A stretch of 64,000 bases of DNA from Ophelia neglecta (taxonomy: Eukaryota), in contig OZ260666.1 of NCBI GenBank assembly GCA_965285935.1, positions 42,408,001-42,472,000 of the forward strand. The letters run 5' to 3'. Positions within the stretch are counted from its first letter, which is position 1. Every line of letters begins with the position of its first letter. The notes beneath the pieces were generated by a model. That model had not been told where the DNA came from. It saw only the letters and a program-made list of their open reading frames with translations, and did no database searches. The translations under genes and the position numbers were made by a program. Positions 8,564 through 60,209 of the stretch are shown one piece after another.

Positions 8564-8606
8564 ATGAAGACGTTTCTATTCGTGCTTGTTCTAGCGGCCA
8601 TCGTTG
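8564..8606 (+). CDS. Gene 1 signal-peptide exon (MKTFLFVLVLAAIV + G)
   Basis: Acceptor TTTTTCTAG (8557), ATG at 8564, hydrophobic h-region, phase-1 donor G|GTAAGT at 8607. Confidence 0.85.
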
Positions 8607-9512
8607 GTAAGTAGACACTCCTCTTTTATAACCTACCTCTGGATAAAAAGCATAAACAGTTTCTTGCAGATTTGAATTGGACTTTATATTATAAAAGCGA
8701 GTATAGTTTGTTTATATTATGTGCATTAATCAGGGAGGGTAGGGGCAAAAAACGGCAAAGCACTATTTTGCTATTTAGCTGTATTTATTTTTTTCCTCAC
8801 TTGTTTTGAAGAGCTACTCGGCATATTTGATAGAAATATTGAATTTGGCGATTGTTCCTCTTAATCGATTTCATTTAATTATAAATTGGGCCGGAGTGGT
8901 ATAAAAGAAAAAGTCAAAAATTTCATAAATACAGTGAATCATTGCAACAGTTAATGAAAGTACATAAGCTCCTACATCCAAGATGTTTATATGAGTAAGT
9001 CGGTCTATCATTTTAAATTTGGAGATAAAGCAGACAGATAGGTCAAATATAACAACACTTTTAACCTAAGCCGCACTCTTGGGGCATGACCGGACACTAT
9101 GAAAGGGACAAGTACCACTTCAAATACCACCACTTGTCCCCAAGACGGGCAAAACCGGACCCTTCAAAATACATACAAAAGGCAATTGTTCTTTAATCAC
9201 ATACGAATTTGTCCTATTTGGGTCCGCTCTCCCCTACCTTGCTTGAAAATCCCTATACGAGATTATATTTATCAATCACCTCCCCCGCCCTCCCCCCACC
9301 TCATCAAGGGTCGGTCCCTTAATACTATTCTTTAAATTTGTTTCGTCTATATTGACTTTTTATAAAGCCTAAACCGGATACACGTTAAATGTAAAACGGC
9401 TATGACGGCTATTATTATAATTGGCTGTTGAAATCTAAGAAAAAAATTTGGAAAATATATATCTGCATGCTAAAGTGCGAACGGTGCTATTTGTCATGTA
9501 CTTTCATTGCAG

Positions 9513-10024
9513 CACGTATGAATGCTGCTTCAACAGAGGTATTAGGAGGGACAACATTGGGAGCGACATCAGCGGAAGAAACTTCACCGGTAGTGACTTC
9601 GCTGGCAACGACTTCATCGGGAATGACTTCATCGGGAGCTACATCACCGGGAGAGACGTCGATTGGGGAGACGTCACCGGCAGGGACATCACCGGGAATG
9701 ACCTCACCCGGACCTACATCACCGGGAGAGACGTCGATTGGGGAGACGTCACCGGCAGGGACATCACCGGGAGCGACCTCACCAGGAACAACAACACCGG
9801 GAGAGAATACAGCTGGAGGGACATCACCGGGAGATACTTCAATAGGGGCAATTTCACCTGGAGCGACATCACCGGGCGCCACAATATCCGGAGCAACAAC
9901 AGAATCAGAAGCCCAAGGCGGTACAACAGGATGCGAACCACTTTGTGACAATTCATCAAGTGGTTTAACATCGTTTATGCTGTTCAATCTGGTAGCCGCC
10001 ATTGCGGCCTGGATGTTGTTCTAG
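9513..10024 (+). CDS. Gene 1 terminal exon: mucin-like TSPG-repeat ectodomain and GPI-like signal (184-aa precursor)
   Basis: Acceptor CATTGCAG|CA joins in frame (G|CA = Ala) with ORF 9428..10024. It has 15-nt TSPGx repeats and ends CEPLCDNSSSGLTSFMLFNLVAAIAAWMLF*. Confidence 0.88.
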
Positions 10025-10599
10025 ACACACACTCGTCTGCTGTTACTCCTAAAACTTTAGAAAATGTATCAGCTAGTGTATGTTTATGGATTATGCATAT
10101 TATACCTAGACTAAATTTAACTAATCACATCATTAAATGATAGGTTTTTAAACAGAAGTTATTTTTATCATGCCTGACCCTCTTCCACCCCTACGTAAAT
10201 ATTTGATCTCTGCGGATGTACCCAGCGCTAGACTTTAACACTGACCTTTTCACACTGTAATCTCACCCTGTCCTTTTTCGCTTTATATGATTTTTGTAGT
10301 TTCATATGACCATTGTTTGAGTATCACCTCCGTATGTATTAGTATTTTAAGAAATTAAATCCTTTTAGGTTACAATCATCACACTGTCTCAATGCGCGTT
10401 GATATCAAACTAACAAGTCAGGTTTCCATCCCATAAAGAGTCCACGTATCATTTCTTAGCATACTTGCTAATACCTTAATTTGATACGTGGGTTAAGTTT
10501 ATGCAAAGAGTAAGTATCAGGCGATTCCTGCTGTGTTAAGTATATTATTACAGCACAATTATATTTCTAACATCTTGCGCTGTCTAAGGAATATGCCAT

Positions 10600-12020
10600 T
10601 TGTATTGTATTGTGTTGTATTTTCCTTTATTACAGTGACTTGTCTTTGATACAAAATCGGAGTTCATCACACACACAAAAACAAAGAAAACAGTAGACCA
10701 AGCCCTCGGGGCTTATAAGTCACTATTCACACTATTACAGGTATATCAAACCCATCCCTAAGAGAGCAGGCATGTGAAGATAACAATCTGCGTTGATTCG
10801 AGTAGGCAGGACAAACACATAAAAAAATGGGTCTCATCTTCCACTTCATGCAAATTACAAATTTCACACAATCGTTCGTCTACCCCTAAGCCACGAAATC
10901 TTCCAGTTTTAATTTTTAATGGCAGCACCCCAGACCTGAACTGTGCCATGATTGATCTTCAATGCCTAGACATATAGTTAGAGATATAGTGTTCACATTC
11001 AAAGTGCTCTTTAAATTTAATGTATGACCTTAATTTAGGCTTGGACAAAAGACAAACTCTCCAGTTGTCTTCTTGCTCAGCCAGAAGCCTTGGCAAAAGT
11101 GCAGATATATTTATGACAGCTTGGTTTTCATAATTCCCTTCAAGTTTTAACTCATAAAACAAATTAGAAAATATATTATTATCTTGCAAAATATTCCACA
11201 TGAATACTTGCTTGGTCAACCTTGTTTGTGACATATTACGAAAACGGTTCCAAAGTTTACAGCAGGCAATCCTCCTCCTGGAATTTGGTGAGGTCCACCC
11301 CACATCCCCCTGGAAAGCATATAAAGGAATTCGTTTATGGAGCCCCAAAATATACCGAATGGCTCTATTTTGTACAGCATCTGGTTCTGTAAATTTTCCC
11401 GGTCCCCATATTGCAGCAAAATTATCAATGATTGGTATAATACAGGTTTCATACAGTTTTTTAAATGTAAAGTGTCCCATGTCCCTGAGCACCTTAAATT
11501 TTGAAATGATACTCCCTAAAGCCCTACCACCCGCTTCTGCCAAAACCTCTGAACCATATTTAAAATTCAAAAATTCATCAAAGTAGATGCCCAAATATTT
11601 ATACTGCTTGACAATTTCGACTTCTGCGTCGTCATATTTGAAAACATATTTCGTAACCTGGGAACGTTTGGTTCGAAAGTGAACAATCTTAGTTTTATCA
11701 ATATTCAGAAATAATCTCCCTTTGTTACACCACACATTTAGTACGTTTAACATTACTTGTAGGTCTGCTTCTGAATCAGTCACGATATCGTCAGCGTACA
11801 TAATAAGCAAATTTATGTCAATGTTACCGAGCTTTACACCACGATTTAATATTTTAAGGTCAGAAGCAAGATCATTTATGTACATATTAAACATCAATGG
11901 GGATAGTACACCCCCTTGACGAACTCCACTTTTAGTAGCAAACCAGTCCGTGTAATAAGAATTCACCTTGACACAGTTAGAGGAATCATTATACAGAGAT
12001 CGAATAGCTTTATTCATTTG
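10600..12020 (-). mobile_element. 5'-truncated LINE: RT C-terminal half plus Cys/His zinc-finger tail; RTE-X-like (clade tentative)
   Basis: ORF 10959..12017 has GVRQGGVLSP, YADDIV and YKYLGI. The frameshifted continuation 10758..10949 reads RLCEIC...EDETHF..C. The 3' end has AATAAA and an (AATAC)n tail at ~10600-10630. Confidence 0.9.
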
Positions 12021-16436: not shown

Positions 16437-16485
16437 ATGAAGTCACAGTTCCTTCTTTTTGGGGTCGTCCTCCTGGCTATCATTG
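16437..16485 (+). CDS. Gene 2 signal-peptide exon (MKSQFLLFGVVLLAII + G)
   Basis: Acceptor TTTCTTTGCAG (16431), ATG at 16437, phase-1 donor G|GTAATT at 16486. Confidence 0.85.
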
Positions 16486-17655: not shown

Positions 17656-17861
17656 CTCTCGGGCATTCGGGCAGCTCTTCAGTGGCCCCGTCTGAAGGGG
17701 GATCGATCGATTCATCGACCTCAACGTCAACATCATCATCAACCCAGTCGTCTCCATCGGGTGGAGGTGGCAGCACAACTCCTAGTAAATCCTCTGCCAT
17801 CTTTTCATCGTTTAAGATGGTCAGTGTTTTTGCAGCCTTGGTGGCTGGTATGTTGTTCTAG
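17656..17861 (+). CDS. Gene 2 terminal exon: Ser-rich ectodomain and GPI-like signal (84-aa precursor)
   Basis: Acceptor TTTCAG|CT (G|CT = Ala) is in frame with ORF 17643..17861. It ends ...VFAALVAGMLF*, and the final ATGTTGTTCTAG is identical to gene 1. Confidence 0.87.
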
Positions 17862-23965: not shown

Positions 23966-25890
23966 GTAAGTCATGATTTTTTTCACAAACCTAGTGTTAA
24001 ACCGATATCTCGGACCCATGAATATTTCTTCCTTTATTAAAATCATTTATTATGATCAGTAGGAGATCTGATACTGTTTATTCATCTGCGGTAGGTCAGT
24101 CTCCAACGAGCCTCTCGTGGGAAGTCTACGGCAGGCTCCTGTAAGATGCCCAGGCCATTCAGAGCAGAGTTTGCTTTAAACATATTTCAACCAGCGCTAG
24201 GCTTTAGCGAAACGGCGTTAGTTGTTAAGGGATTAAGTAGGGTCAATTAGTATATTGTCGGTTAAAAAACTTGATCGCTAGGTTAGAGATAATAATAGCA
24301 ACATGTGCGTTAATATAACACATGAACGAAGGAAAATCAGATGTTGATGATACAATTTGCGTTTAAAATTTTGAGGAGGGTACAGGAAATGTCATCAAAT
24401 CTCATTCACATTCCGAACATAACAAATAGCATCCATTCTACTACGTGCGCAAAGCAGCTCCTTTTCTGAAACTAAAAGCTGTTTTAGCTTTCCCTGATGA
24501 TAACGCAATGCTTTTCCTATTCCGAAACCACGTTTGCACGATGGCCTTTGTTTTAAAAAGCACGTCGTCAAAATCATTGAAGCACTGTGGAATTGTTAAA
24601 AGAACTATTCATATTTATGGTTTCAAAAACTATCATATGCGTGGATCTTTTACTTTCTACCGCGGGAGGTTCCTATACCCCACCCTTGGGATGAAGGCTA
24701 ATAGGAAAGTACATATACGAACAGCTGGGAGGATGCACTTCATATGCCTTCCATCAATGAAAAAGACATCATATTTTGACAATATATGTAGTAACCTGTT
24801 GTTATTTTCGGGGCTATAAACAGGCGCCGATATCTTCCTTTGTTTTATAATTATATGTCAGCCCTCGCCAACTTGGACCTGCAATTGCCCTTGACTAAGA
24901 AACGATGTTTAAAATCGTTGAGCTTTTCAGTCTGCTGTTACAAATTAAGACTCCCGTTTTGGCCTTTAATACTTCCATACGGAAGAAACGTAACTCATTG
25001 AGGGACGGCAGTGCGCCTTATCTCATCTTCTTCTTCATTCCGCCGCCCTACGTACTCGTGGACTGTGTAGTGCTTTGTGAGAAAATATACATTTTTGGAC
25101 AACAATTACAATGACTTTGCGGTGAAAGACAGTGTAGTTTAGTCCATCTTGAAATCAAAGATTTGTCAATAATAATTTACGGCCCTTCTAGATCTAGAAA
25201 TATAACTCTTTTTTTTAGCAAAAACATTACACTGAACTCTTCATGATTTGGTTTGTGAATTTATATAGGCATAAGCATATATGTCATACGTTGACTATTA
25301 TATGTATGCAGTTTAAACTACAAATGTTAGCTGTAAATATGTTCATGCTGATTTCCTATACAGGTTATAACTTGTTTTAATTTGTTCCAACTTGAAAGGC
25401 ATCTATTAAAGTTGAGTGCTCAGACTCGTGTCAGGACATGCTACATTAATCAGCAGCATAAATTTGTAATTATGTGACAGTGTAGAACTTCCAAATAATT
25501 TCACAAAAGTTATATACCAAAGATGACCAACAAAAGTATTCTGTAAAATGGGATAAGATTAAATTCAGGATACTTTGCAGCATCCATGTCAGCTGCATTA
25601 AATAGTTAAAGTAAAAAGACATGGGATAATCGAGATGACAGTCTGGAACATGGATTTCCTGACTTGGTCTTTTAAATTTTGTCGAATGGATTGTTTGCGC
25701 CACCAGAATGTGCACGCACGTGCGTACTTGCGAAAATGTTTCTTCACTTCTACCCGTGCATGGTATAATAAATTATGATCTTTTTAATACTGAGCAGTGT
25801 GGTGGATTTGCGTATAAATATGTAAATATTAGCCTATGGGCGCAAAACGTTTTATTTTTAATTTTTAATTTTATTTTACAGATCGGAATA

Positions 25891-25939
25891 ATGTATACCA
25901 AGTTTATTGTAGCGAGTGTCTTGTTATTGGGCGTCATTG
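25891..25939 (+). CDS. Gene 3 signal-peptide exon (MYTKFIVASVLLLGVI + G)
   Basis: Acceptor TTTTACAG (25881), ATG at 25891, donor G|GTAAGT at 25940. Confidence 0.9.
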
Positions 25940-26177: not shown

Positions 26178-26422
26178 CAATATCAGAGGCGTCAAGCACC
26201 ACATCCGATGAACCGACCGTCGCTGTGACCGCCGGCATCACTAACGGTGAAACAGACACATCAAACCCCAATGCAGGCGGCAACACCGATGGTGGGACAG
26301 ACACAACAAACCCCAATCAAACGGATGGCGCCTCCCCCGACACTCCGGACAACGGTTCCATGCCGTTGCAGGGAATGTTCCTGGTGTCCCTGGTAATGGC
26401 ACTACTTGGTCAACTGCTCTAA
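26178..26422 (+). CDS. Gene 3 terminal exon: Thr/Asp/Asn-rich ectodomain and GPI-like signal (97-aa precursor)
   Basis: Acceptor TTTCCTTCAG|CA gives AISEASSTT...; the exon ends DNGSMPLQGMFLVSLVMALLGQLL*. Confidence 0.9.
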
Positions 26423-26452
26423 ACCCATCACCATCCAGCGACAGGAAACGAA

Positions 26453-26530
26453 GCCCTGATGTCGTGACGTCACTCCTTGATACTTATGACAAAATTATTA
26501 AGTGGGACTGCGTCAGGATGATATGACGGT
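26453..26530 (+). promoter_or_regulatory. Conserved 3'UTR stem element (gene 3 copy)
   Basis: GCCCTGATGTCGTGAC ... GTCAGGATGATATGACGGT; homologous copies in genes 5, 6 and 7. Confidence 0.6.
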
Positions 26531-27203
26531 GTCGCATTCTGTTAGATGTATAATGGTGAAATGGCGATCTAACATATTTGACATGAAAACAATATTCTTA
26601 AGTTTTTGTAGGATTTTCCACCAGTTCCGTGTGATTGAGACAAGTCTAGTTTCCAATCTCATACCAGTGGACCTAATATTTGACATTAGCACTCATCGTG
26701 TGTTTAAGGGTGCACTACTCCATGCAGTAGTAGTGACGGGCGTTCGAACATGGTTTACATAAAATTATGTTAATGTGACATAAACACGTGTAGAATGACA
26801 CTTAGGCGCGCGAGTTCGTAAATTCTGGTATCATTTAACCATAAATGACCCAAATTACATTTATTAAACTATATATGATTTAAAAGCGAACAAGGGTAAT
26901 AATTATGACCCAACAACTTACAATATTTATACTCATTTTATAAGGAAAATCCATAACTGCATAAATTCAATTTGATATCTACTGATTATACTTTCTGTTT
27001 GTTTTATACACGGTTACTTTTTACCCGAACCTGAGAACTCTTCATTTATTGATATAGGACAAGCAAAATTTGTTCATGTGTCTTTAAATGTTTAAAAACA
27101 TATTTACTTTTCAAAGCATAACACGTGAGTTAAATTGTCATAAAAAGTGTTTTTAGCTTGAGTAATTTTTCCCCATTGTGAAAAACCAACTGGATGAGAT
27201 GAC

Positions 27204-27227
27204 TGTAGCTTCCTACATGAAAATAAA
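27204..27227 (+). terminator. Gene 3 poly(A) signal with upstream hairpin
   Basis: TGTAG-CTTC-CTACA followed by AATAAA at 27222; the context is conserved in genes 5, 6 and 7. Confidence 0.7.
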
Positions 27228-28296
27228 CATTCGAGTTGTAAAGATGCCACTTATGTTTAATGTGTAATTGAAGGTACTTGTAGTATTTATGCTATAAAAA
27301 CATAAGATAAAAAAAACTTTGAATTTGTATCATATTCAGGTATTTATTGCTACAAATATTGCTCACTAGGAAGGAGGAGCAGCAATGCATATATTACTCT
27401 CAGGCCTTCTACTGTTATACTACTAACTTATATTTTTGGACATACTTTAAATATTCCATACAATACACAGACCATATAATTTTTGTTCTTTTGTGAACGG
27501 ATGATACGTACTACACTAGCTGCACTTCAAAATATCAAATTAAAGACCCGGGCTCTGAATCTAAACTACTTATTTAAGCTGCTTGTTCTGGGGGGCTCTT
27601 TGCCTTTACATTTTAATCAATTTTCCAAATGTTTTTAGTTAACAAATAAACAAAGCAAATGAAAGTGTACATAGTTACCACATTAACACTTTTATATGTT
27701 AAGACGTCATTTACTAATTTAGTCTCGTGCTTGATGGCGCGCCAAGTATGTTCGTATGGTCTTAAATGTTATATAAAAGTATATATGATTACGTTTAGAA
27801 ATCGTTGCAGCGGAAGTTAATTATTCAGCTGTTACTACAATGGAAACTGTTTTTATCGTTTTAACACGTTATATGTTGTGCTAATTTGTAAACCGGTCGG
27901 ACGAGATGAATGAAGTTTCCTGAGTGAAAATAAAACTGTCATGTTAAAAATATGTTATTTGAACTTAATGGGTAATTTGATGAATGATTGTTAGTGCCAT
28001 CAAAGATGGGCTAAAATCAAATTTGATTTAATCTTATTTGGATAGTTTTTAAAAGAAAATTTGTGCTCAACAGTGCCGATCAAGCCGCATCGCCCTCTAG
28101 TGGTCATTAAACTTAAAATAATACACTACTATAGAATCTAAACTAATTTGGACCATACACAGTCCACAAATGCAAATATGTTTGCCTTATTCTGAATAGA
28201 TGAGCTGACGTTAGGTCGAAGTATGAAATTACAGGGAATTCGCTCGTCACTGATGATCTGCCTGATAACTATCTCGCTGTACAAATGCAAGAAACA

Positions 28297-30357: not shown

Positions 30358-31410
30358 GTAAGAAATATACTTTTTTAAAGTTATCCTTTTGTTTCCGAAA
30401 AAACATGATACAGGCGATGTTTATGATTAAAGAAAAATCATACAAACCCGAAAATGATTATGAGTAACGTATAATATCAATATAACAAATATTGGGCCAT
30501 GTATTTTTATTGTTAAATAACATTTCTGCCGTTCACTAGTTCCCAATAGCTGAACGAGTTGTGTTATGTGTATTTATGGCAGAAATATACCAAGAGTTGG
30601 TCACATACGTATTTGTTAATAATATTTGTAAATTATAGAATAAGATTATCGACAAAATGATTTTAATTGCACGCTCCCCATTAGAGTAAGCATGAAATTC
30701 TTCAGAGCCATGGTAGATCTCTTTTTGTACAGAGAAACGGTATCTACTGTGAGAGTCTTTCCTGTAGTCATTTAGCATGAACTTTGAGTTCACTAAAAGT
30801 GAAAACTTGTTGCCATGAGCTATACAAATACACGCTGCATGGTAATAAGTTAAAGGTTACAATGCCGGAACCATAACTGCGTTGTATAAAAGCCTGCTTT
30901 GACAGATTATTACACTTCATACGATTTCTTCATATATGGCTGTTTTGTTGAAATTTTCCAGATATCGGTAGGCCTACCAATAATAGTAAAAAAATTGTGA
31001 TTTAAATGTTTGTTTTGTAAAATGATGTCACTTATTGCCCACCGTTAGCCCCCCCCCCCCTCTCTCCCGATCCAACCCTGGTGATAAATGATCAACGTCC
31101 CCAAAGGGGGTGGTTGTGAGGTAAAAAGTGCCTAACAGAGACTGACCTAATGCCGACTAAGGGGAATACCGCTCTCTCGGGCCTGCTCGAGCTATAACAC
31201 CCAGCGAAGATCAACCAAGTAACTCAGAGCGTATAAAATCCATCGATTTAATATATGATCTTAAAGCAAAAGGTCACCAAAGGTAAATCCATCTCATTAA
31301 TATATGATCTAAAAGCAAAAGGTCACACATTAGCCTTAAACAAAGGGTATCTTGATATTAATGTTTTATCATTTGGCTTCATTGCTTTTGATTATGTTAC
31401 AGATCCAACA

Positions 31411-31459
31411 ATGTCTACGAAGTTCATTCTGACGTGGGTTCTGCTGTTTACAAAAATCG
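31411..31459 (+). CDS. Gene 4 signal-peptide exon (MSTKFILTWVLLFTKI + G)
   Basis: Acceptor TGTTACAG (31402), ATG at 31411, donor G|GTGAGA at 31460; 16 codons + G as in the paralogs. Confidence 0.82.
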
Positions 31460-32674
31460 GTGAGATTTCCTCTATTGCAAATGAAACTTATTTACATAGA
31501 TAACACCTCAAGGAATTCGATTTAATTTTCTGAGTTGCAATTTTTCTCGTCAACGGAGGTGCAACTGAGAATATTTTGTTAATGAAATTAAGTAATACCA
31601 TATGTTTCCAATGTTAACCATAACTGTTCCAAATAAAGCATATTTATCACTAGGGCATAGGGTTATTACAATCAATTCTGACTCATAGTTCAACAAATGA
31701 TAAATGATTTTAAAATAAGCATGCTATGTACTAATGTGTACAAAAGACATATACAACCCAAACACAAATTTATAAGATGTACTCATATTAAGAAACAAAA
31801 CAATCAATAAACGTGAATAGAGAAAATCGAGAACTGGACAATTTTTCGAGAAAAACAAACATATCCGCATTAAATACAAAGAATTGGCTTTATCCCAGCC
31901 TGACTGTCTCTGAGATTTGTAAAAAAAATCATTGGTACCTAAACCCGATTATGTTTACTAGCTCTTCCTATAGTGTGACATAAAAAGTTATAAAATGTAA
32001 CATTAGGTAAGATGGAATTGGTTGTGTGATGTTCGATTAAACGTGTGTCCACTGGACGGTCCACCAACTCCCCTAGGCCTATTGTTTTTTGCGAAGCTGA
32101 AGCTTTAATCGGCCAAACTTCCAAGACGAACATTCGGACATGACCAGTGATGACTGGACCAGTGCAGATGCAGCAGCCGAAACAATAATTTGCTACCTGT
32201 TCCGGTGGCGCTAACGCTCTTCGCAGAACTCTGACTACAGTGCTGCCTCGTTGCGGAGCTCTAGCACAAATAGCCATAGGACATATGAATTGCTTTCATT
32301 CAAAATATGACATAAATAACTCTGGGCCTATTTCCTTTGCTTCAATAAGGTTGACACTAATGTAAAAGCTTTATTTATCAAATATGTAATATCACAAGAA
32401 AAAGGAAAAAAATGCTATGTCAGTTATATAGTAAAACGCTTTTCACTCCCGGCTAACGTATATAGAAATCCGAGAAAATATCTGATCAAACAAAGTTTGG
32501 AACTGAAACTAGCCAACCACTTTATACCTAGCTGGAATTAGTCTTGCAGTTTGTATTCCGAAACCAATTTGATCTTTCTCAATAATATTTATTGCGTTTT
32601 ATACATTAATGTTCTATCATTGGTATATAGACAATTGTTGGTCATATGTTTAAATGACATCCTGTTTCTTTCAG

Positions 32675-33102
32675 CGAAACATGACACCGTCTCTACTACC
32701 AACACTCCAGCCCCTAATGGAACTATCTCGCACACTACAGCACCTACCATAACTACCACGCAAATTACAGCATCTACTGAAACTACCAGGAACACTACAG
32801 CACCTACCATAACTACCACGCAAATTACAGCATCTACTGAAACTACCAGGAACACTACAGCACCTACCATAACTACCACGCAAATTACAGCATCTACTGA
32901 AACTACCAGGAACACTACAGCACCTACCATACACACCCCATGGCCACCAACTGTGCATTTAACCGGTGAGATAACGGGCGCTCCCTCTGCCACCGGCGTC
33001 TCAGAACCCGAACCCACTGTGCTAGAAAATGCTTCCACGCAACTGAAGGGAATTTTCGTGATGCTACTGATAACGGTACTATTCAGTCGGTTGCTTTTTT
33101 GA
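32675..33102 (+). CDS. Gene 4 terminal exon: Thr-rich tandem-repeat mucin ectodomain and GPI-like signal (158-aa precursor)
   Basis: Acceptor TTTCTTTCAG|CG is in frame with ORF 32551..33102. It has 20-aa repeats and ends ENASTQLKGIFVMLLITVLFSRLLF*. Confidence 0.87.
32732..32931 (+). repeat. Coding VNTR, 60-bp unit x ~3.3 (TTAPTITTTQITASTETTRN)
   Basis: Sequence lines 32761, 32821 and 32881 repeat exactly. Confidence 0.97.
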
Positions 33103-34950: not shown

Positions 34951-35207
34951 GTCATCTCATCCCATTACAGCATAAAATACAGCTCAATATATAATGAAAC
35001 ATTTAATAAAGGCAGTTATAGCAACTAGATAAGCTGTTATGGTTATGAAAATGTTTACAAATAAAGGTCAGGATCATATTAGCAAATATGGTTTGGTTTG
35101 CAGAAAAGAATTATCAATATAATGTTGTAGTTTTGAAATTCTGCTTCATTTGTAATTATTAGAGTCAATATATTTAAGTATATCAACACAATCCAGAAGA
35201 TGACGAT

Positions 35208-35284
35208 ACCGTCATATCGCCGTGACACAAGGTCAAAACCTTTCAGGCTTTCAGCCATTCGGTAGTGACGTCACGACATCCGGT
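35208..35284 (-). promoter_or_regulatory. Conserved 3'UTR stem element (gene 5 copy)
   Basis: Minus strand reads ACCGGATGTCGTGAC ... GTCACGGCGATATGACGGT. Confidence 0.65.
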
Positions 35285-35312
35285 CTTCACATCTTTTAAC
35301 TATATGGGTCTG

Positions 35313-35608
35313 TTAGTGTGATCTTTGGACCAGTCGAGAGAGCGGAGACAGAACCAGGGACACCACCAGCACGTGCTGACAATGAATGGTATAGCAGCCA
35401 TTATCCAAACTAGGAGTGCTGGTTTCAGGTGTGTCCGCCGTCGCGGGAACCGTTGCGGTTCCTGTTTGGGTTCCCCCCGGGCTGGTCCCTGTGTTTGTAT
35501 TCTCAATAGGCACTGTGGTGGATCCCGTGTTTGTACCGTTGAATGTCGTAGGTTCCCTAGTCGAATCGTCTGGAGCCATGCTCGCCGTAGTTGATGCCTC
35601 AGTCAGCG
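35313..35608 (-). CDS. Gene 5 terminal exon: Thr-rich ectodomain and altered GPI-like signal (114-aa precursor)
   Basis: Acceptor GTTTTCAG|CG gives ALTEASTT..., in frame with ORF 35313..35666. It ends DNGCYTIHCQHVLVVSLVLSPLSRLVQRSH*. Confidence 0.85.
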
Positions 35609-36230
35609 CTGAAAACACAATGTTATTTGAATATATACATAATAGAAATATTATGTCTATGATCATGCTTTATGGCTTATAATCTTTACTTGACACGCGT
35701 GCCAAGGTTGAATTTTGTCGAATGGAATAGGGTCTTAGTTTTATTGATAAAGTTTTAGGCATAGATCATAGGCCTACGTGTATTTTAAAACGAAGAATAG
35801 AACCAAATACTTATTTATTACCAAATTTACATATTACACCTACATATAATAATATATATATATTAATCTGGACAAAATATTTAAATTTGAGAGTATGGGT
35901 TTAAGTGTTGGTAAGGGGAAGAATCTGACGAAGAAAAGGCAATATTTCTTAAGTAGTACCCCATTGGCAATAACAGAAAAAAAATGGGCACCTTATGAAT
36001 ATGATCAAAAAAGAAAAAAGACACTTCATACAAATAAAGCAGAATTGTCTAAAATAATAATAATAATTAACAATTTAGTTTTACATATCACCAACATAAA
36101 ACAGCAAACTAGTTTAAAATGTATTAAAACGTGGCATCATCATAAGAAAACAAATTGAATGATACAAAGACAATAATAAAATCAATTACAAAAGATGCAA
36201 TATGCCTTCGCACAAAGTGATAATAATAAC

Positions 36231-37040
36231 AACTGAACTGAACTTTTATTCAACCAAATTAATAATAACATGCAAAAAAACCTATATATTCAAACCATAA
36301 TGCTACACAAAGACAATTATTAACAAAATAAGTATTTACAATCGATAGATTAGTTTGGTTGGGAGACCCCCACTAAGTCCCAATGGACGCTACCATGAGG
36401 GCCACCCAGAAAAATTAAATAAATAGAGCTGATACTGTATTATGGAGTAGACTAGAAATCGGATATAATACAACTAATGTACAATAGCGAGTATACTAAT
36501 AAAAGAGGAACATTAATTTAATACAAGAATGCACTTAATACAATACGAATTTAAAATTTGACAATTTAATTTAATATATCATAAATTGTTAACAAGGAGA
36601 TATCAGATCAGGGGCAAATACAAGAAGTACAGTTAGTATAGCATGAAGGAAACACAGTGTGTAGTAATATTAAGACATTCTATGATTACCAGTTAATCAT
36701 GGAGGCTGCGCAGCCCTAAGGCATACATAACAGTTTTCAATTTCTCATGTAATAGAATAGGTATCAATAATAAAGATTTGAAATAAGCACAAAAACTAGG
36801 AAAAACAAGAACGTTAGCCATTTGCTTAATGTGATCTGGGATTTCATTCATCTCAGAGACGAGTTGATACCTAAGACATTTCATTGCAAAGTTATGCCTC
36901 ACAAAGGTTTGATAGAATCGAGATCTATTTCTGGTGTCATGTTCATGCAACTCGGAGGCTATGCGTAAATTAGAGTCACTGAAATATGTTGGAATGCTAT
37001 TGTGTATGTAAACAAGTAAATAACAAGTAACATTAATAGG
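36231..37040 (-). mobile_element. 3' fragment of a CR1/L2-group LINE inside gene 5 intron 2
   Basis: HEHDTRN...HNFAMKCLRY..V...N.IP..IK is typical of LINE ORF2 C-termini. The 3' end has AATAAAA and a (GTTCA)n tail at ~36231-36250. Confidence 0.65.
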
Positions 37041-37326
37041 ATAATAGCGAAAATAACGCAAGAGTCGAAATATAATACAAATTTAAAAATGTATTAATGT
37101 ATATATTATTTATTATATTTCCAACGCGTGCAGTGCCGGACACGACTAATGAGTAGAAAATACTTCTAAGGGACTTTTCTGGTGTTTGGCCATTTGACTT
37201 GCTTCATTTTATGACGTTCAACCTTGACCCACATGCACAGAACAAGACCGTGGTGTTGAATAAAAAATGTACAGTTTTCTCTTAATTCTATAGGGTTTTC
37301 ATCATTTAAAATACATTATAACTTAC

Positions 37327-37375
37327 CAATGCCTACAATCAGCATTACACTCGCTGCAACCAAGTTCTTGACCAT
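37327..37375 (-). CDS. Gene 5 signal-peptide exon (MVKNLVAASVMLIVGI + G)
   Basis: Acceptor TTGATTACAG ending at 37384, ATG at 37375, donor G|GTAAGT at 37326. Confidence 0.87.
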
Positions 37376-39429
37376 TTTTAGTTCTGTAATCAAGGAGAAA
37401 AAACTAATGCTTAGCTGAATCACAAGCATTTTTTTCTTAAAAGTTCCTTTGGACAATCAAGTATCTTTTTCCTCGCAAGGCTAAATCAATGTTCTTTTCT
37501 CTTCCCGTTTTAAACATCGAAATCATATTTTCCACTATTTCTGGTTATCTCAATAATAATTTAGCCGGCTATACATTTCGTAGTCGCTGAGAAAACGTAG
37601 GTTTCGGTTTTGTACAAGAGACAGTTACTAGTAAATTAAGACATCACATATTGCCTACCTTTTGGAAGGATATCATAAGCGGCCTGATTCAAAGTTGTGA
37701 TCCTCTCCCTCTCAGAGTGAAACAAGGAGCCATATATACCTACCGGTATTCTAACGTAGCAACTCTTTGTTTTGACAGCCAACAGTAAAACAATAAAACC
37801 GCAATAATTACAATAAAGGAGACACTATTTGAAATTGTACATGTTGACATAAGTGGTGAGGTAAAATATTATAGGTACAAGCGCGCAAAACGCATGCATT
37901 TGTTGCTAGCTGCATTAAGTAGGGTCTTCTCTTCAAGTTACAAAAACCGACAATTTAATTCTTTTTGTCCAGAATCAACCCTTTGCTTTACTAAAAACAG
38001 CATATGTTCCAACTAGCATACTCCAAACCAAGGTGGGCTTCAGGTGAATCCTGGTTCCCGGGAACTCAAGAATTTTATGCCATTATTTTTATCTCGAAAT
38101 CTAAGCACGAATTACATCTTGTTTAGATATAAATGATATTCTCATTTGCATGAACATGTATCTCCATGGAATATTGTGTTCATTTTTGCAAAGCATGCAT
38201 AACACAAATTCACATATTTATGCAACTAGACAGACAAGATCAGGCAAGCCGTCCCCGTACTCGCATTGGCAGATGTGCACTATTAACAGTCCTCTGTTTA
38301 TGTTTAAACCAACACTTCTCTGAGGTAGCATGGTACTATCAAGATCAGTTGTTATTAGAGCTGGCGCGAATGATCGTTTAACGCAAAAAATCACCCATAG
38401 CAGAAATTTACGGAAGATGAATTTAAAAAAGGAAGAATGCTTAGTTAAGCAGGGGTTTTGATAGGTAAAGACCAAGGCTACGTGCAGCAAAGCAGGGAGA
38501 AGGTCACCGAGATCGAGGAAAGGCGCCCTGAATGAAATTTGCCTAGAGGGGTGCCCCAAATCACTCTAAAATAAAACTGACAATGCGCCCGGCCTTGTAG
38601 TAAGTTAAGGGACTGACTCTGTTCTATGTAGGCCTATACATATATATTGATATTTTAAATCTGGCACGATCCTTCATCATTTGAGTTATGTTTGCAAATT
38701 AAATAGGGACATCGTGGAAAAGAATTGTTGTTACCCACAAAAAAGTTAGAAACTGTCCATAGATAAATGGTATACTTGTTCGATGGTCGCCAGGAGAGAA
38801 ATACTATTTGTGTTTTCAAAGAATCCTTGCAGGTAATTTGTGTTCATTTCATCATATAGTTTGGATTCCTAGGGTATTTATTAAAGGCTTGCGTTCTCTA
38901 TAATACCTAGGTTTATCTGCCATTGTTCACAACATTTGAATCTTCCTTAAGCCAATGATTGAGATTTATTATTATAATTGACAAGGACAAATGACAGCAA
39001 ACCATCTCCTCTTTTCTCTAGCTAACACATCCCCAACCCATTTGCCATCGTGCAAATGTACACAGAATGTATAACCGCATAATGAATTGATCCCCGTGCA
39101 AGAGGCCGATCGCCGAGGCGGGGTAGGGGTTGGGGTTCGGAGGGGGGGGGGGGGGTTCAATTGAAGTAAAAATGAACCACCATACTGTCAATGTCCAATA
39201 TAATCCGAAACGTATTAGTTTATCATTTGTACCAGTTTTCTATTATGAACAACTAGTGTCAATTCCATTAAGTCAAAGAAAATGGCAACAGACACCATTT
39301 CGGTTTTCTATATTGGGGAGGGATGGGGGGGGGGGGGGGGGGGGGGGTCAAAGAGAGGATTAAATGACTGAAAATGAAACCAAAAGTAAGAAAATCACCA
39401 ATAGTTTTGGGAGCATTTTGGCTTCTTAC

Positions 39430-51586: not shown

Positions 51587-51644
51587 ATGATGGTTATGGC
51601 TACAAAATTCATTATTGGGAGCTTACTGCTGTTGGGCATCTTAG
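51587..51644 (+). CDS. Gene 6 signal-peptide exon (MMVMATKFIIGSLLLLGIL + G)
   Basis: Acceptor TTTATTGCAG (51581), ATG at 51587 (the ATG at 51596 aligns with the paralogs), donor G|GTGAGT at 51645. Confidence 0.88.
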
Positions 51645-52487: not shown

Positions 52488-52648
52488 CCATATCGGAGGG
52501 CTCTACCGCAACTACGACTGGCTCCGATGCAAATACCGGTACAAATGCCCCTGAGGCTACGACAGGGACGGGTGACAACGGCTCCATGCCATTGCAGGGA
52601 ATGCTTGTTATGTCCCTGGTAATGGCACTATTCGCTCGAATGCTCTGA
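52488..52648 (+). CDS. Gene 6 terminal exon: short Thr/Gly-rich peptide and GPI-like signal (69-72-aa precursor)
   Basis: Acceptor TTTCTATCAG|CC gives AISEGSTATTT...DNGSMPLQGMLVMSLVMALFARML*. Confidence 0.9.
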
Positions 52649-52679
52649 ACAATGTTCCATCTAGCGACAGGAAACGAAG

Positions 52680-52748
52680 ACCGGATGTCGTGACGTCACT
52701 TCGGATGCCCGGAAGGTTATTTCGATAGTGTCACGATGATATGACGGT
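52680..52748 (+). promoter_or_regulatory. Conserved 3'UTR stem element (gene 6 copy)
   Basis: ACCGGATGTCGTGAC ... GTCACGATGATATGACGGT. Confidence 0.65.
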
Positions 52749-52992
52749 ATCGCCATCTGCCGGATGTATTGTTTATTAGAATAGACTAAAAAGAAATTCA
52801 AGTGAAGTCTTTTATATAACTTTGTGCTACAGTGGCATTTTGCTGTCTATTTGTAAAACCCGTATTGCTCATCTGACTTTAACTGTGATATTAATAACGC
52901 TACCTTTACATTTTTAAATCATGATAACTAAAGTTGTATTCTTGTGATTTTATTACGTTGGCGCTGTCGTCTTGACGAACAGGGTAATATGA

Positions 52993-53017
52993 ATGTAGCT
53001 ATCTACATGATAATAAA
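52993..53017 (+). terminator. Gene 6 poly(A) signal with upstream hairpin
   Basis: ATGTAG-CTAT-CTACAT followed by AATAAA at 53012. Confidence 0.7.
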
Positions 53018-53777
53018 CACCCCTGTTCTGAATATTGATTATTTTTGTCTAATTGTTCATGCTTCCTCATTTTTTGTCAATTACCGCCCACCCTCCAATA
53101 CACGTGTCTAGTTATATTTAATTGCTTTTATCCCTTCAACACTTAGGCCTAACCTAATGCAATATTAACAGGCATGATAACATTATTATTATGTTCCTCT
53201 TATATTTCGGAAAGAAGACTAGCAATTTTGATTTCTGAGTAGGCTTCTTAGTGGAAAATTTACAGAATTGTAGAAACTACTAGAGACTACTTATTTTGAA
53301 AAAAAAAAAGATAGTGCAAAGATTAAACAGTCAAAGCTTTAAGCAAGCAAGCAAGCAAGAAAAGAACATAATATTACGTATCTACACCTAAATAAGTTCC
53401 AAGATGCAATTTTGTAATATTTCTCAGTTATGATAGACAAATTTTCCTGACGAAGCCCAATAGGATATGCCATTATAAAAGGCCCATAGCTAGATACTAA
53501 CGGACAGTTCAGAATAAAATCCGACCCCCCCCCCCAGGGGATTTTTCTGATTATTCTACATGCCTATTAAGTGTTTTAACTGAGAAAACAGACTGCCGGT
53601 TTAATGCGGACTCGAACCTAGACTGTTGAGTTAAAAATCATAAGCACGCAGCACTATATAAAATTCGATGCCCTGCGTATGTACTACATAGGCCTCGCTG
53701 GTTTGACAGGGGGTTAAACAGATCGGGTCCCTTTCCAACCGTGGAAACGACCACGCTTAGAACATAGACTAATTAAA

Positions 53778-57411: not shown

Positions 57412-58308
57412 GCTGACCCGCAACCCCAATATCGAACAACCCGAGAATTATATATTAGATTATATTGAAAATAAGCTGGTTGCCCTCCGGATCATACGGG
57501 TATAGAAACTGTCCAAACTTCTTCAGTATTTTGTGCTGCAAACCACCTTAACTTAAGAAAGGGTTAGCCTCACAACGTAATAATTCCTAGTAGGCCTGGG
57601 GTATCTGTAGGTAGACATATTATCGCTCTGGACAGCAGTCTGCACACTGGCACGTAAAACATGGTGGATGAGTGACCAAGAACAGCAGCGTGAGTATTAT
57701 AGTGTTTTCAATTTAAATTGATGAAGTGCATGTAAAATCACTTTTAATACTCTCCAAAGAACACTTGCATAGCTGCCTCCGGGTGAGTTACCCAGTGCAA
57801 CTGGAAGTATTGCAATCCAAACCCCCCACTTGTGGAAGTGTCTGAAGAGGGCATCGAAGTGTGCCTTTATTTACATACATGACGAACAGCGTAATATGAA
57901 GTTTCAAATATTTGGTTGACCCGCTCAATTATTGAACTTTCAAAGTTAACAAACAAACAGGTTGAAGTCGTTAAATATACCGTGCACTTGAGAGGTGGAA
58001 TATTGTGTGGTTCACTTTCCCTTTGATAAACTATGCCTATATTATATATCCTATAAGATAACCCCTTAATATGGTCAAACACTACAACACCACCCCACCC
58101 ACCCACCCCCACCCGCTTCTAAAGTGCGTGAACAGCTAATGCCCAAACCAGTAGGCCTTACGCACGTTACTGTTAGAATGGTATTAAGCGCATTCATGTA
58201 TTAAAATATAATGTCATCTACACTTAAGACACACAGGAAGCACGGAGGATCATTCAAATGCAACACTCAAAATAACCAAAGCGAAAATGAATGTTCTGAA
58301 CACGGATG

Positions 58309-58333
58309 TTTATTATCATGTAGCGAGCTACAT
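58309..58333 (-). terminator. Gene 7 poly(A) signal with upstream hairpin
   Basis: Minus strand reads ATGTAG-CTCG-CTACAT GAT AATAAA. Confidence 0.7.
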
Positions 58334-58568
58334 TCATTTTATCCTGTACAGGCGATCACAGTAACATACAGCTGTGGCATCAAATAAATTCAGAATGACC
58401 TTGACATGAAGAACTACCACAGATAAGCCAAATTATAACTTGTGATACAAATAAGAACAATCTGGCTTAGAATTCAAGTTTCCGTTTTGAAAATTAGTGT
58501 CAGTACGAACGTTTTTGCAGTTAAATTAGTTATTCCAATAGTATAGTTGTACATCGAGCAGACAACAT

Positions 58569-58631
58569 TGCCGTCATATCACCGTGGCACACCCCCATCA
58601 ACTAACGGAAATGAGGTCACGACATCCGGCA
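58569..58631 (-). promoter_or_regulatory. Conserved 3'UTR stem element (gene 7 copy)
   Basis: Minus strand reads TGCCGGATGTCGTGAC ... GCCACGGTGATATGACGGCA. Confidence 0.65.
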
Positions 58632-58672
58632 GTTGCTTTTGTCGCTCGAGAGTCTGGCGTATATATTGTGTA

Positions 58673-58809
58673 TTAGAGCATTCGAGCGAGTACAGCGAGC
58701 ACCAGTGACGTCACCAACGTGCACTCTAACGGCGTGGCGCCGGCGGTCGTAGTTGCTGGTGTAGTTGTAGATGTTCCAGGATCATTGGTGGTGGCCGCTT
58801 CTGATAGGG
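58673..58809 (-). CDS. Gene 7 terminal exon: minimal Thr-rich peptide and GPI-like signal (61-aa precursor; absent from the ORF track)
   Basis: Acceptor TTTCTTGCAG|CC gives ALSEAATTNDPGTSTTTPATTTAGATPLECTLVTSLVLAVLARML*. The C-terminus is homologous to gene 6. Confidence 0.88.
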
Positions 58810-59527
58810 CTGCAAGAAACCGGCATTTGTTTTATTTACATTTATGTAGAGCTATAGCATATATATATATAGGAATAACGACATTCCTCATAAAAAAACC
58901 ATTGATTACAAATTACAAAGAACGTTATTAAGATAAAAGTTTATTGCTAGAAGCCACTGACGTCAAAAATAGTGGTGTGTCCCATTCACACCACAAAACC
59001 GGTGGGGGGGGGGGGGTTATTTCCGGCCCTCGGGATCGGCCTTATTAATTCACCGTGTTCCGGGAATTGTAGTATTAATTTATCGTGCTTTTGAATTTGA
59101 CTTTTCTCCGTTCCTATAGGGATTAATGATTTCCATTTATTGATCTGCTTAGTTTCCCGTGAATCGGGAATCATCGTTCAAAATTATCGGGATCTGGGGA
59201 ACAACTTATTCGATATGATGAGAAATATCAATATTTTAAATGCCCGTGATTCGGGAATGGCCTCATTTTAAAACTGTGAACCGAAAACCGGGAACTCGAC
59301 CCCCAATATACCCCCCCCCCCCTCAATATATATACTGCTGCCTATTGGGGAGAAAAGGCGAGGTATTGTTGGTTTAACCCCCCCCCCCCCCCCCCCCCGT
59401 TTCTGATTCCACCCCACCCAAGCATATCTAGGTTTGGTAATAAAAATCGTAACTACCCCGCCCTCTCCCATGGCATCCCCCGGCCTTCGCTCCCAACAGG
59501 AGATAAACAAAGACCCTCTAAACTCAC

Positions 59528-59576
59528 CAACGATTCCCATGAGAAATACACACACGACAAACAATTTCGGAGACAT
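59528..59576 (-). CDS. Gene 7 signal-peptide exon (MSPKLFVVCVFLMGIV + G)
   Basis: Acceptor CATTACAG ending at 59585, ATG at 59576, donor G|GTGAGT at 59527. Confidence 0.88.
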
Positions 59577-60131
59577 CTTTAGAGCTGTAATGTAGAAAAA
59601 AGCAAATGATAATAATTTTAATAATATGATTAAATAAAGTTTCTGTTTGTAGCCTTAAAGAGAGATTACACCTGGAAGGGAAATGAAATCCGATTTTTTC
59701 TTTGAATCGGTCTCTCTCCTATATTAAAACAGAAAATCTAATATATTCACCCAGTTATTTAATCTAAGAATATAATGTAAATGCTAAAGTTTGATGGAAA
59801 TAATAAATGGCTGACGCGTGGTCACAACTTTGTAACTTGCGTAGATAATGAACTAAACACTTTCCATTTCAGTTATATTTAGATGTGTTGTTCATCTATA
59901 GGCAATTGTTTTCAACAGTCTTAGCATTAAAATTGGTTTATCAAAATAATAAGACCAACGAGGGCAACTTGGGCAAAATATTCTAAATTTTTTACAATAT
60001 GTGTCCTTTTGTACAGAAACAGTGGCACTCGTTCTGGGAATGGGAATTGTAACACAAAATAAATATACTACTTATCTGAAACCCATGTTCTGTTAATTGG
60101 TTTAATAATACAATATAAATGTACTTCTTAC

Positions 60132-60209
60132 CTTATTTGGAAGCAATGTTCGCCGTTAAAGATCGCAGTGAGTGAGTGAGTGAGCTCCGTAGCAGGGAAT
60201 ATATATATA
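60132..60209 (-). promoter_or_regulatory. TATA box and non-coding exon 1 of gene 7
   Basis: (TA)n box at ~60199-60209; donor AAG|GTAAGAAGTACATTT at 60131, similar to genes 4 and 6. Confidence 0.7.

What the first reader, a model, noticed from the sequence alone, without database searches (positions are those of the whole stretch)
8564..60209. Tandem family of seven small GPI-anchored mini-mucin genes (CD24/CD52-like architecture) with hypervariable ectodomains
Seen: seven genes share a signal exon of 14-16 codons (19 from the first ATG of gene 6) plus G, a phase-1 intron that always forms an Ala codon (G|CN), and a terminal exon. That exon has an S/T/P/G-rich segment and a 22-28-aa tail starting with small residues (N-GS, N-AS, N-SS, A-GA) and running into a hydrophobic stretch. 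The ends are conserved, but the middles are unalignable and range from ~18 to ~140 aa. Known: signal peptide + short O-glycosylated peptide + GPI signal is how vertebrate CD24 and CD52 are built. Inference: this is a rapidly diversifying array of glycan-display surface peptides, possibly for self/non-self marking, gamete recognition, or the glycocalyx/mucus. The proteins have no folded domain and short exons, so automated annotation probably misses them.
Basis: partly seen in the sequence, partly recalled or inferred. Interest (0 to 1): 0.9.

Follow-up and report, generated by a model that had tools for sequence, protein, structure and literature searches.

The report
Tandem array of tiny mucin-like surface-peptide genes
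An invertebrate (probably annelid) chromosome carries a cluster of at least eleven very small genes, each apparently making a sugar-coated peptide tethered to the cell surface by a lipid anchor; the design is well known from CD24/CD52 and parasite mucins, but this family has no detectable relatives and no RNA data exist to prove it is expressed.

Summary
All seven two-coding-exon models are in the sequence as described: GT donors, pyrimidine-tract AG acceptors, a phase-1 intron, a junction codon GCN, a Ser/Thr-rich middle and a hydrophobic C-end.

Detectors built from the models found 8 signal exons and 13 exon pairings (several per gene, all in family genes) in 224 kb. They found none in reversed or shuffled sequence. 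The array is larger than reported, with 11 genes over about 118 kb: four lie outside the window and none elsewhere in the 762-Mb genome.

Evidence that these are real genes is evolutionary only:
- dN/dS on signal plus tail is 0.23-0.70 in 12 of 12 pairs.
- CDS GC is 51% against 35% for introns.
- Poly(A)-signal blocks are conserved, and there is a family-specific 3' motif.
- In one young duplicate pair, the ectodomain (49% identity) has diverged more than the intron (72%), while signal and tail stay at 94-95%.

All tails fit the textbook GPI-signal layout. I could not run a GPI predictor, and no RNA run exists.

No homolog was found in Pfam (CD24 included) or among 1.84 billion protein representatives.

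Verdict: a new orphan family of a known kind, small mucin-like and probably GPI-anchored peptides. Interest is moderate. The proposed recognition functions are untested.

The parts
8564..8606 (+). gene 1 signal exon CDS (14 codons + G)
9513..10024 (+). gene 1 terminal exon CDS (169 codons after the junction codon, ~5-aa/15-nt and 75-nt in-frame repeats, GPI-like tail, stop)
16437..16485 (+). gene 2 signal exon CDS
17656..17861 (+). gene 2 terminal exon CDS (Ser-rich, GPI-like tail)
25891..25939 (+). gene 3 signal exon CDS
26178..26422 (+). gene 3 terminal exon CDS
31411..31459 (+). gene 4 signal exon CDS (weakest hydrophobic core of the set)
32675..33102 (+). gene 4 terminal exon CDS; holds a 60-nt (20-aa) repeat x3.3 at 100% identity (32732-32931)
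37327..37375 (-). gene 5 signal exon CDS
35313..35608 (-). gene 5 terminal exon CDS; family stop position reads CAA, 4-codon polar extension, weaker tail; 3 non-synonymous and 1 synonymous allelic differences in DNA contigs
51587..51644 (+). gene 6 signal exon CDS (19 codons from the first ATG)
52488..52648 (+). gene 6 terminal exon CDS
59528..59576 (-). gene 7 signal exon CDS
58673..58809 (-). gene 7 terminal exon CDS (smallest: 44 codons)
26451..26474 (+). conserved 24-nt 3' motif (ETS-like CCGGATGT + CRE palindrome TGACGTCA) after the stop of gene 3; also at 33108-33131 (+, gene 4), 35264-35287 (-, gene 5), 52677-52700 (+, gene 6), 58610-58633 (-, gene 7)
27189..27237 (+). conserved block holding AATAAA, probable 3' end of gene 3; counterparts at 52979-53040 (+, gene 6), 58286-58347 (-, gene 7), 34922-34962 (-, gene 5)

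Best explanation
The locus is a lineage-restricted tandem family of at least 11 genes, 7 of them in the window. The precursors are 61-184 residues long. Proposed mechanism: the N-terminal signal peptide takes the chain into the ER. Its last residues are encoded across a phase-1 intron, and cleavage falls at the junction Ala or a few residues further on, for example after the conserved S/T-E-A/G of subfamily B. The C-terminal 22-25 residues then act as a GPI-attachment signal that the GPI transamidase exchanges for a lipid anchor. This signal consists of a small-residue triplet such as N-G-S, N-S-S, N-A-S or A-G-A, a 2-6-residue spacer, and 15-19 hydrophobic residues running to or near the end. 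What remains is an acidic, unfolded peptide of about 20-140 residues, rich in Thr, Ser, Pro and Gly. It would be heavily O-glycosylated and displayed on the outer membrane leaflet as part of the glycocalyx. The middle evolves by slippage and replacement of short in-frame repeats, while selection and gene conversion hold the two processing signals and the 3' region constant. Shown here: the gene structures, the family relationship, the constraint on signal and tail, and the fast turnover of the middle in one young pair. Inferred: transcription and splicing, signal cleavage, GPI addition, glycosylation and surface display.
For: Splice sites, phase and junction codon are as described in 7 of 7 window genes and 3 of 4 outside genes. 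Detectors were specific, with 0 hits in reversed or shuffled controls. The tail profiles of the two subfamilies align end to end (hhalign probability 89%). Tail-profile searches of the whole genome return only this cluster. dN/dS on signal plus tail is 0.23-0.70 in 12 of 12 pairs, with dS 0.15-1.3. CDS GC is 51% against 35% for introns. Nine of 11 start codons have A at -3, and all 11 are followed by a K or R and then 10-13 hydrophobic residues. The small-residue triplet lies 22-25 residues from the C-end in 9 of the 11 tails (30-31 in gene 5 and the downstream Bp2), and hydrophobic tails of 15-19 residues are short for a membrane span. Ectodomains have 33-58% Ser+Thr, D+E well above K+R, and 3-21% bulky hydrophobic residues. 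Mucin-type in-frame tandem repeats occur in genes 1 and 4. In the upstream duplicate pair, identities are: signal exon 94% (all three differences synonymous), intron 72%, ectodomain 49%, tail 95%, 3' flank 95%. Poly(A)-signal blocks and a 3' motif unique to the family in the genome are conserved.
Against: There is no transcript evidence: the only public runs holding the locus are DNA from one sample. No dedicated signal-peptide, GPI or O-glycosylation predictor was available, so those steps rest on textbook rules. An Arg 3-4 residues from the end in most tails could instead be the stop-transfer residue of a very short membrane anchor. Gene 5 has a degraded tail and gene 4 a weak signal core. 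Every ATG follows an acceptor-like site, so upstream exons exist or are likely, and they could in principle add coding sequence. dN/dS rests on only about 37 codons per pair with near-saturated dS.
Confidence: 0.6

Rival explanations
1. The same genes and the same mucin-like ectodomain, but the C-terminal hydrophobic stretch stays on the protein as a transmembrane anchor with a 2-4-residue cytoplasmic stub. These would be type I micro-mucins rather than GPI-anchored ones.
For: Most tails carry Arg 3-4 residues from the end, followed by M-L, L-L-F or M-L-W, as a stop-transfer residue would. Counting from the Leu of the spacer, some tails reach 18-19 residues.
Against: The Arg is replaced by Trp, Gly or Gln in genes 1, 2 and 3. 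The uninterrupted hydrophobic run before it is only 12-14 residues. A conserved small-residue triplet with a short spacer sits just upstream, which a plain membrane anchor does not need. By established knowledge, proteins with no cytoplasmic residues beyond a short hydrophobic C-end are usually GPI-anchored.
Confidence: 0.15
2. The two exons belong to larger transcription units. Upstream exons, implied by the acceptor before each ATG, or undetected internal exons would add coding sequence, so the real proteins are not mini-mucins.
For: All 11 ATGs lie 0-13 nt behind a pyrimidine tract plus YAG, against 8% of random ATGs. There is no in-frame stop between acceptor and ATG, although these stretches are only 0-4 codons long.
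Against: Each ATG opens a canonical signal peptide and has A at -3 in 9 of 11 genes. Genes lie on both strands, 5-20 kb apart, separated by retroelement debris. No conserved upstream coding block was found within 3 kb among paralogs. The two upstream genes have a TATA box 57 nt before the ATG.
Confidence: 0.1
3. The array is transcriptionally silent or decaying: an orphan duplication family whose open frames persist because Thr/Ser-rich repeats rarely create stop codons.
For: There is no RNA evidence and no homolog in any database searched. In gene 1 several frames are open across the repeat. Gene 5 has lost the family stop.
Against: dN/dS is below 1 in all pairs on the non-repetitive signal and tail. 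Splice sites are intact in all 11 genes although dS is near saturation. The poly(A) block and 3' motif are conserved. The ends are selectively retained while the middle and the intron diverge.
Confidence: 0.1
4. These are secreted pro-peptides. The hydrophobic C-end would be a removable pro-region or a lipid- or matrix-binding segment, for example of mucus, tube or cuticle components, with no membrane anchoring.
For: The Echinococcus apomucins with the same layout are thought to end up in an extracellular mucin layer (PMC3510090).
Against: No dibasic or other processing site precedes the tail. The layout matches the GPI signal closely. Release from a GPI anchor would also explain an extracellular fate.
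Confidence: 0.05

Closest known systems
Vertebrate CD24 and CD52
   Same: The precursor is tiny: a signal peptide, a mature peptide of about 12-30 residues rich in Ser and Thr with no folded domain, and a C-terminal GPI signal of about 22-25 residues. From memory, both genes also have an intron inside the signal-peptide coding part. Genes 6, 7 and the small outside genes would give mature peptides of about 20-30 residues. A language-model feature search placed a CD24 cluster at rank 6 with score 0.77, which is below the level that counts as evidence.
   Different: There is no sequence relationship: no Pfam CD24 match at E up to 10. Here there is an 11-gene tandem array with two subfamilies, members of up to about 140 ectodomain residues with tandem repeats, strongly acidic ectodomains, and an invertebrate host.
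Echinococcus cyst-wall apomucins (EGC00317, EGC02904 group; PMC3510090)
   Same: The host is a lophotrochozoan. The proteins are small, with a signal peptide, a Thr-rich core and a shared C-terminal sequence predicted to be a GPI signal. Signal and C-end are more than 95% conserved between species while the core is about 63%. This is the same pattern of conserved ends and variable middle seen here.
   Different: No detectable homology: the tail profile found nothing in 1.84 billion representatives. The apomucins belong to a parasite-specific structure, the laminated layer, and are known from abundant transcripts. Here expression is unknown.
Trypanosoma cruzi TcMUC/TcSMUG mucins and MASP
   Same: These are multigene families with conserved N-terminal signal and C-terminal GPI regions around a variable, repetitive, Thr-rich centre (PMC2691823, abstract seen).
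   Different: They are protist genes, intronless, present in hundreds of copies and tied to immune evasion in a host. Here there are 11 spliced genes in a free-standing animal genome.
Plant arabinogalactan peptides (AG peptides)
   Same: From established knowledge and not tested here: a multigene family of precursors with a signal peptide, a mature peptide of about 10-15 residues that carries large O-glycans, and a GPI signal.
   Different: They use Hyp-linked arabinogalactan chemistry on a Pro/Ala/Ser/Thr core, belong to another kingdom, and have no sequence relationship.

Membership tests
CD24 family (Pfam PF14984) and CD52 | Sequence match to the family profile | tested here: not met
   hmmscan of 10 terminal-exon translations against Pfam-A at E up to 10 gave no CD24 or CD52 hit. 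The Atlas feature score of 0.77 is below the evidence level.
CD24 family (Pfam PF14984) and CD52 | Architecture: signal peptide + very short Ser/Thr-rich peptide + GPI signal | tested here: met
   Rule-based reading of exon translations. This shows it works like these proteins, not that it is a member.
GPI-anchored proteins (generic) | N-terminal ER signal peptide | tested here: met
   11 of 11 have a K or R within residues 2-7 and then 10-13 hydrophobic residues. Small residues at -1 and -3 are available at the junction Ala or 4 residues later. No SignalP run was possible.
GPI-anchored proteins (generic) | Small residues at the attachment site and two residues on, a short polar spacer, then a hydrophobic stretch running to the C-terminus, about 20-30 residues in all | tested here: met
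   The triplet lies 22-25 residues from the end in 9 of 11 genes (30-31 in gene 5 and Bp2), with a spacer of 2-6 residues and a tail of 15-19. Gene 5 is weaker, with mean hydropathy 1.03 and a polar extension. This is a heuristic only; NetGPI, PredGPI and big-PI were not available.
GPI-anchored proteins (generic) | Release by PI-PLC, or a lipid anchor seen chemically | not testable with these tools
   Bench experiment.
Mucin-type (PTS-domain) glycoproteins | Pro/Thr/Ser-rich unfolded region, often of tandem repeats | tested here: met
   Ser+Thr is 33-58% and bulky hydrophobic residues are 3-21%. In-frame tandem repeats occur in genes 1 and 4 and in one upstream gene.
Mucin-type (PTS-domain) glycoproteins | Dense O-glycosylation | not testable with these tools
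   NetOGlyc was not available; needs glycoproteomics.
Echinococcus apomucins | Homology of the shared signal or C-terminal sequences | tested here: inconclusive
   The 30-column tail profile found no protein at E <= 0.001 in 1.84 billion representatives. No direct comparison with the published sequences was made, and a 30-column profile has little reach.

The most novel reading that the evidence does not exclude
The cluster is a fast-evolving, polymorphic glycan-display locus of an annelid. A set of GPI-anchored micro-mucins would have peptide cores remade by repeat turnover while gene conversion preserves their processing signals. They would be co-regulated through a shared ETS+CRE module placed just after the stop codon, and glycosylated in part by the fucosyltransferase gene embedded in the array. 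The locus would serve as an individual- or gamete-recognition code.
Probability: 0.08. Interest if true: 0.7.

Novelty: new member of a known kind. Interest (0 to 1): 0.4.

Why it matters
If expressed, these would be among the smallest animal surface glycoproteins outside vertebrates. They would give a clean example of how a gene family keeps two short processing signals fixed while the displayed peptide is rebuilt faster than neutral intron sequence. Genes of 61-184 codons with no domain and a split signal peptide are hard for annotation pipelines. A recipe that finds them (signal exon, phase-1 donor, Thr-rich exon, hydrophobic end) could uncover similar orphan families in other invertebrate genomes. 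The design itself is familiar from CD24/CD52, tapeworm apomucins, trypanosome mucins and plant AG peptides. The finding therefore extends a known theme rather than opening a new one.

Tried and rejected
- **RNA evidence:** the run search returned only three runs from one sample and none is on record as RNA. Laying their contigs on window 31400-37390 showed that they span introns and intergenic DNA, so they are genomic and say nothing about splicing. The gene 4 repeat falls in a gap between contigs, so repeat-length polymorphism could not be read.
- **Word-indexed protein searches:** terminal exons of genes 3 and 1 found nothing. A control search with the neighbouring GT10 exon also found nothing, so these blanks carry little weight.
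- **Profile search:** the 30-column tail profile found no hit at E <= 0.001 among 1.84 billion representatives.
- **Pfam:** no family at E up to 10 other than noise.
- **ESM Atlas features:** the best score was 0.87, to an unnamed bacterial cluster, and CD24 scored 0.77. I treated these only as a lead.
- **More flanking DNA:** The ends of the array rest on the whole-genome tail-profile searches, which would miss divergent members like the one ending at +85131.
- **First detector thresholds:** the first terminal-exon thresholds missed four true members, and the relaxed version had 13 hits in the reversed control. Only the signal-exon and paired detectors are used as statistics.
- **Joined models:** All searches used single exons by reference, so no signal-peptide scoring across the junction and no exact-sequence look-up of spliced products was done.
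- **Earlier notes of this scan:** nothing was recorded at or near this place, or under GPI or mucin words.
- **Literature:** searches for a described family of this kind in annelids or other free-living lophotrochozoans found none.
Full report
**1. What is in the sequence**

The window is G000:C9:42408001-42472000, part of a 762-Mb assembly. Earlier unchecked notes of this scan take the genome for an annelid, or possibly a mollusc. GC content is 33-44%.

- a GT donor (GTAAGT, GTAATT, GTGAGT or GTGAGA) and an AG acceptor behind a pyrimidine tract;
- an intron after the first base of a codon;
- a junction codon GCN, which is Ala;
- upstream, an ATG followed by 14-16 codons (19 in gene 6) with a Lys and then a hydrophobic run;
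- downstream, an open frame of 44-169 codons rich in Thr, Ser, Pro, Gly and Asp/Glu that ends in a hydrophobic stretch and a stop.

CDS coordinates are listed under parts.

**2. More than chance, and larger than reported**

I stitched the window to 80 kb of flank on each side.
- A signal-exon detector looked for ATG, 12-21 codons, a K or R early, a hydrophobic end, and then G|GT[AG]A[GT]. It gave 8 hits, all family members. It gave 0 hits in the reversed sequence and 0 in five shuffles.
- A detector requiring a signal exon paired with a Thr/Ser-rich terminal exon with a hydrophobic end returned only family members, and 0 in controls.

These scans and manual follow-up found four more genes outside the window:

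| Gene | Donor (window coordinate) | Stop (window coordinate) | Strand |
|---|---|---|---|
| Upstream 1 | -11114 | -10245 | + |
| Upstream 2 | -2176 | -1254 | + |
| Downstream 1 | +85981 | +85131 | - |
| Downstream 2 | +106527 | +106950 | + |

Profile searches of the whole genome with the last 30 codons of each subfamily returned only these genes (best E 1e-14 and 3e-17). Everything else scored E above 0.1. The family is therefore confined to about 118 kb of one chromosome, as far as a 30-column profile can see.

**3. One family with two subfamilies**

- Subfamily A is genes 1 and 2 plus the two upstream genes. Its signal reads M-K-T/S-x-F-L-L-F. Its tail runs S-S-F, then a hydrophobic run with A-A, then M-L-F or M-L-W.
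- Subfamily B is genes 3-7 plus the gene at +106.5 kb. Its signal often reads M-x-T-K-F-I. Behind the junction Ala it has a short I/L-S/T-E-A/G motif. Its tail runs D-N-G-S, a short spacer, then a hydrophobic run ending A-R-M-L.
- The gene at +85 kb is more divergent.

The two tail profiles align end to end (hhalign probability 89%). Both subfamilies share intron phase, signal-exon length and junction codon. I therefore read them as one family.

**4. Evidence that these are genes**

No RNA run holds the locus. The three runs found are DNA of one sample, so the evidence is evolutionary and compositional.
- dN/dS on the ungapped signal plus tail codons is 0.23-0.70 in all 12 within-subfamily pairs, with dS from 0.15 to 1.3. 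Splice sites and frames are intact in all 11 genes.
- CDS GC is 51% against 35% in the introns.
- Nine of 11 start codons have A at -3.
- In subfamily B, a block holding AATAAA is conserved 330-800 nt behind the stop in genes 3, 5, 6 and 7.
- A 24-nt motif lies 5-45 nt behind the stop in genes 3-7. The motif is an ETS-like CCGGATGT next to the CRE palindrome TGACGTCA. It is identical in genes 5 and 6, although their coding tails share only 42% of residues.
- In the whole genome, the 22-nt core of this motif with up to two mismatches occurs only at genes 3, 5 and 6.

**5. Conserved ends, fast middle**

The two upstream genes are a young duplicate pair. Aligned over 2.3 kb, identities on ungapped columns are as follows:

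| Region | Identity |
|---|---|
| Upstream | 88% |
| Signal exon (all three differences synonymous) | 94% |
| Intron | 72% |
| Ectodomain part of the terminal exon | 49% |
| Tail | 95% |
| About 960 nt of 3' flank | 95% |

The displayed peptide has changed more than the intron. One copy now carries a T-T-E-E microrepeat. The tail and 3' region look homogenised, probably by gene conversion.

Gene 4 holds a 60-nt unit repeated 3.3 times at 100% identity. Gene 1 holds 15-nt and 75-nt repeats. The middle therefore turns over by slippage of in-frame repeats, as in mucin VNTRs.

In the DNA contigs, gene 5's ectodomain shows three non-synonymous and one synonymous allelic difference. That number is too small to test.

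**6. Likely processing**

By textbook rules, all 11 N-termini look like signal peptides. Small residues suited to signal peptidase sit at the junction Ala and, in subfamily B, four residues later.

In 9 of the 11 C-termini a triplet of small residues lies 22-25 residues from the end; in gene 5 and the downstream Bp2 the nearest lies 30-31. A 2-6-residue spacer follows, and then 15-19 mostly hydrophobic residues. This is the layout of a GPI-attachment signal, and the hydrophobic run is short for a membrane span.

In six genes the triplet is also an N-x-S sequon. Ectodomains are 33-58% Ser+Thr, acidic, nearly free of Lys, Arg and Cys, and poor in bulky hydrophobic residues. No fold is expected.

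I could not run SignalP, NetGPI or NetOGlyc, and I sent no joined protein to any tool. These steps are therefore inferred.

Weak points:
- Gene 5 has CAA where the others have the stop, adds Q-R-S-H, and has a weaker tail.
- Gene 4 has a Lys inside the end of its signal.
- The Arg near the end of most tails could mark a very short transmembrane anchor instead.

**7.

All 11 ATGs lie 0-13 nt behind a pyrimidine tract plus YAG. Among all ATGs of the 224 kb, only 8% do. The signal exon is thus probably preceded by a non-coding exon, or by a trans-splice acceptor.

The two upstream genes also have a TATA box 57 nt before the ATG, so the point is open. No shared upstream exon was found within 3 kb.

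**8. Surroundings**

Between the genes lie fragments of retroelements. These include reverse transcriptase at 10959-12017 on the minus strand and in several flank ORFs, plus tyrosine-recombinase and DUF3504 ORFs.

One ordinary gene piece sits inside the array: the last exon of a GT10 fucosyltransferase, at window +70.6 to +71.2 kb (L012:6566-7225, plus strand; Pfam E 2e-36).

**9. Comparison with what is known**

No relative was found:
- Pfam, CD24 included, gave nothing.
- Two word-indexed protein searches gave nothing. They are uninformative, because a control with the GT10 exon was also blank.
- HMMER with the tail profile against 1.84 billion representatives gave nothing.

The design, however, is well known:
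- vertebrate CD24 and CD52;
- the Echinococcus cyst-wall apomucins, whose signal and GPI-signal ends are more than 95% conserved while the core is about 63% (PMC3510090);
- the T. cruzi mucin and MASP families, with conserved ends and a variable centre (PMC2691823);
- plant AG peptides (from knowledge).

Literature searches found no such family described in annelids or other free-living lophotrochozoans.

**10. Verdict**

The architectural interpretation is supported by rule-based evidence only, and the functional suggestions are untested.

I file this as a new orphan family of a known kind, small mucin-like and probably GPI-anchored surface peptides. My confidence in that reading is 0.6 and my interest score is 0.4.

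Noticed in passing
window 26451-26474, 33108-33131, 52677-52700 (+); 35264-35287, 58610-58633 (-); also L013:1060-1125 (-): A 24-nt motif sits 5-45 nt behind the stop codon of genes 3-7. It joins an ETS-like site (CCGGATGT) to a perfect CRE palindrome (GTGACGTCAC). It is unique to these genes in the 762-Mb genome. The divergent gene at +85 kb has unalignable but equivalent sites (two GGAAGT cores flanking ATGACGTCAT) within 70 nt of its stop. It looks like a shared DNA-level regulatory module placed 3' of very short genes.
   Followed up: partly
0-13 nt upstream of each ATG (e.g. window 8545-8563, 25870-25890, 59577-59600): All 11 start codons follow a pyrimidine tract plus YAG, against 8% of random ATGs. 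This implies an upstream non-coding exon or a trans-splice acceptor. It cannot be resolved without RNA.
   Followed up: partly
L012:6566-7225 (+), i.e. window +70.6 to +71.2 kb: The terminal exon of a GT10 (alpha-1,3/4-type) fucosyltransferase gene lies inside the mini-mucin array, between gene 7 and the next family member. This may be coincidence, or a glycan-building enzyme linked to its substrates.
   Followed up: partly
L011 and L017 (window -11.2 to -0.3 kb): In the young duplicate pair, the tail plus about 960 nt of 3' flank is 95% identical while the intron is 72%. This suggests gene conversion limited to the 3' part.
   Followed up: partly
window 36200-37000 (intron of gene 5) and 34400-34800: DNA contig depth rises from about 20 to hundreds or thousands, so high-copy repeats (probably transposon fragments) sit in the gene 5 intron and just 3' of gene 5.
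   Followed up: no
window 10959-12017 (-): A 352-aa ORF with the C-terminal half of a reverse transcriptase domain (Pfam RVT_1, E 2e-15). It is a retroelement fragment between genes 1 and 2.
   Followed up: no
window 876-1222 and 61656-61819: Non-coding tandem repeats: a 40-nt unit x8.7 (92% matches) and a 17-nt unit x9.6 (91% matches).
   Followed up: no
L015:3884-7035 (+), window about -46 to -43 kb: Overlapping ORFs of 780 aa (reverse transcriptase) and 415 aa (tyrosine recombinase, Phage_integrase). This is a DIRS-like retroelement upstream of the array.
   Followed up: no
L024:8416-9999 (-), window about +142.4 to +144 kb: A 528-aa open frame with ankyrin repeats that runs off the fetched piece. 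It is the first conventional domain-bearing gene found downstream of the array.
   Followed up: no
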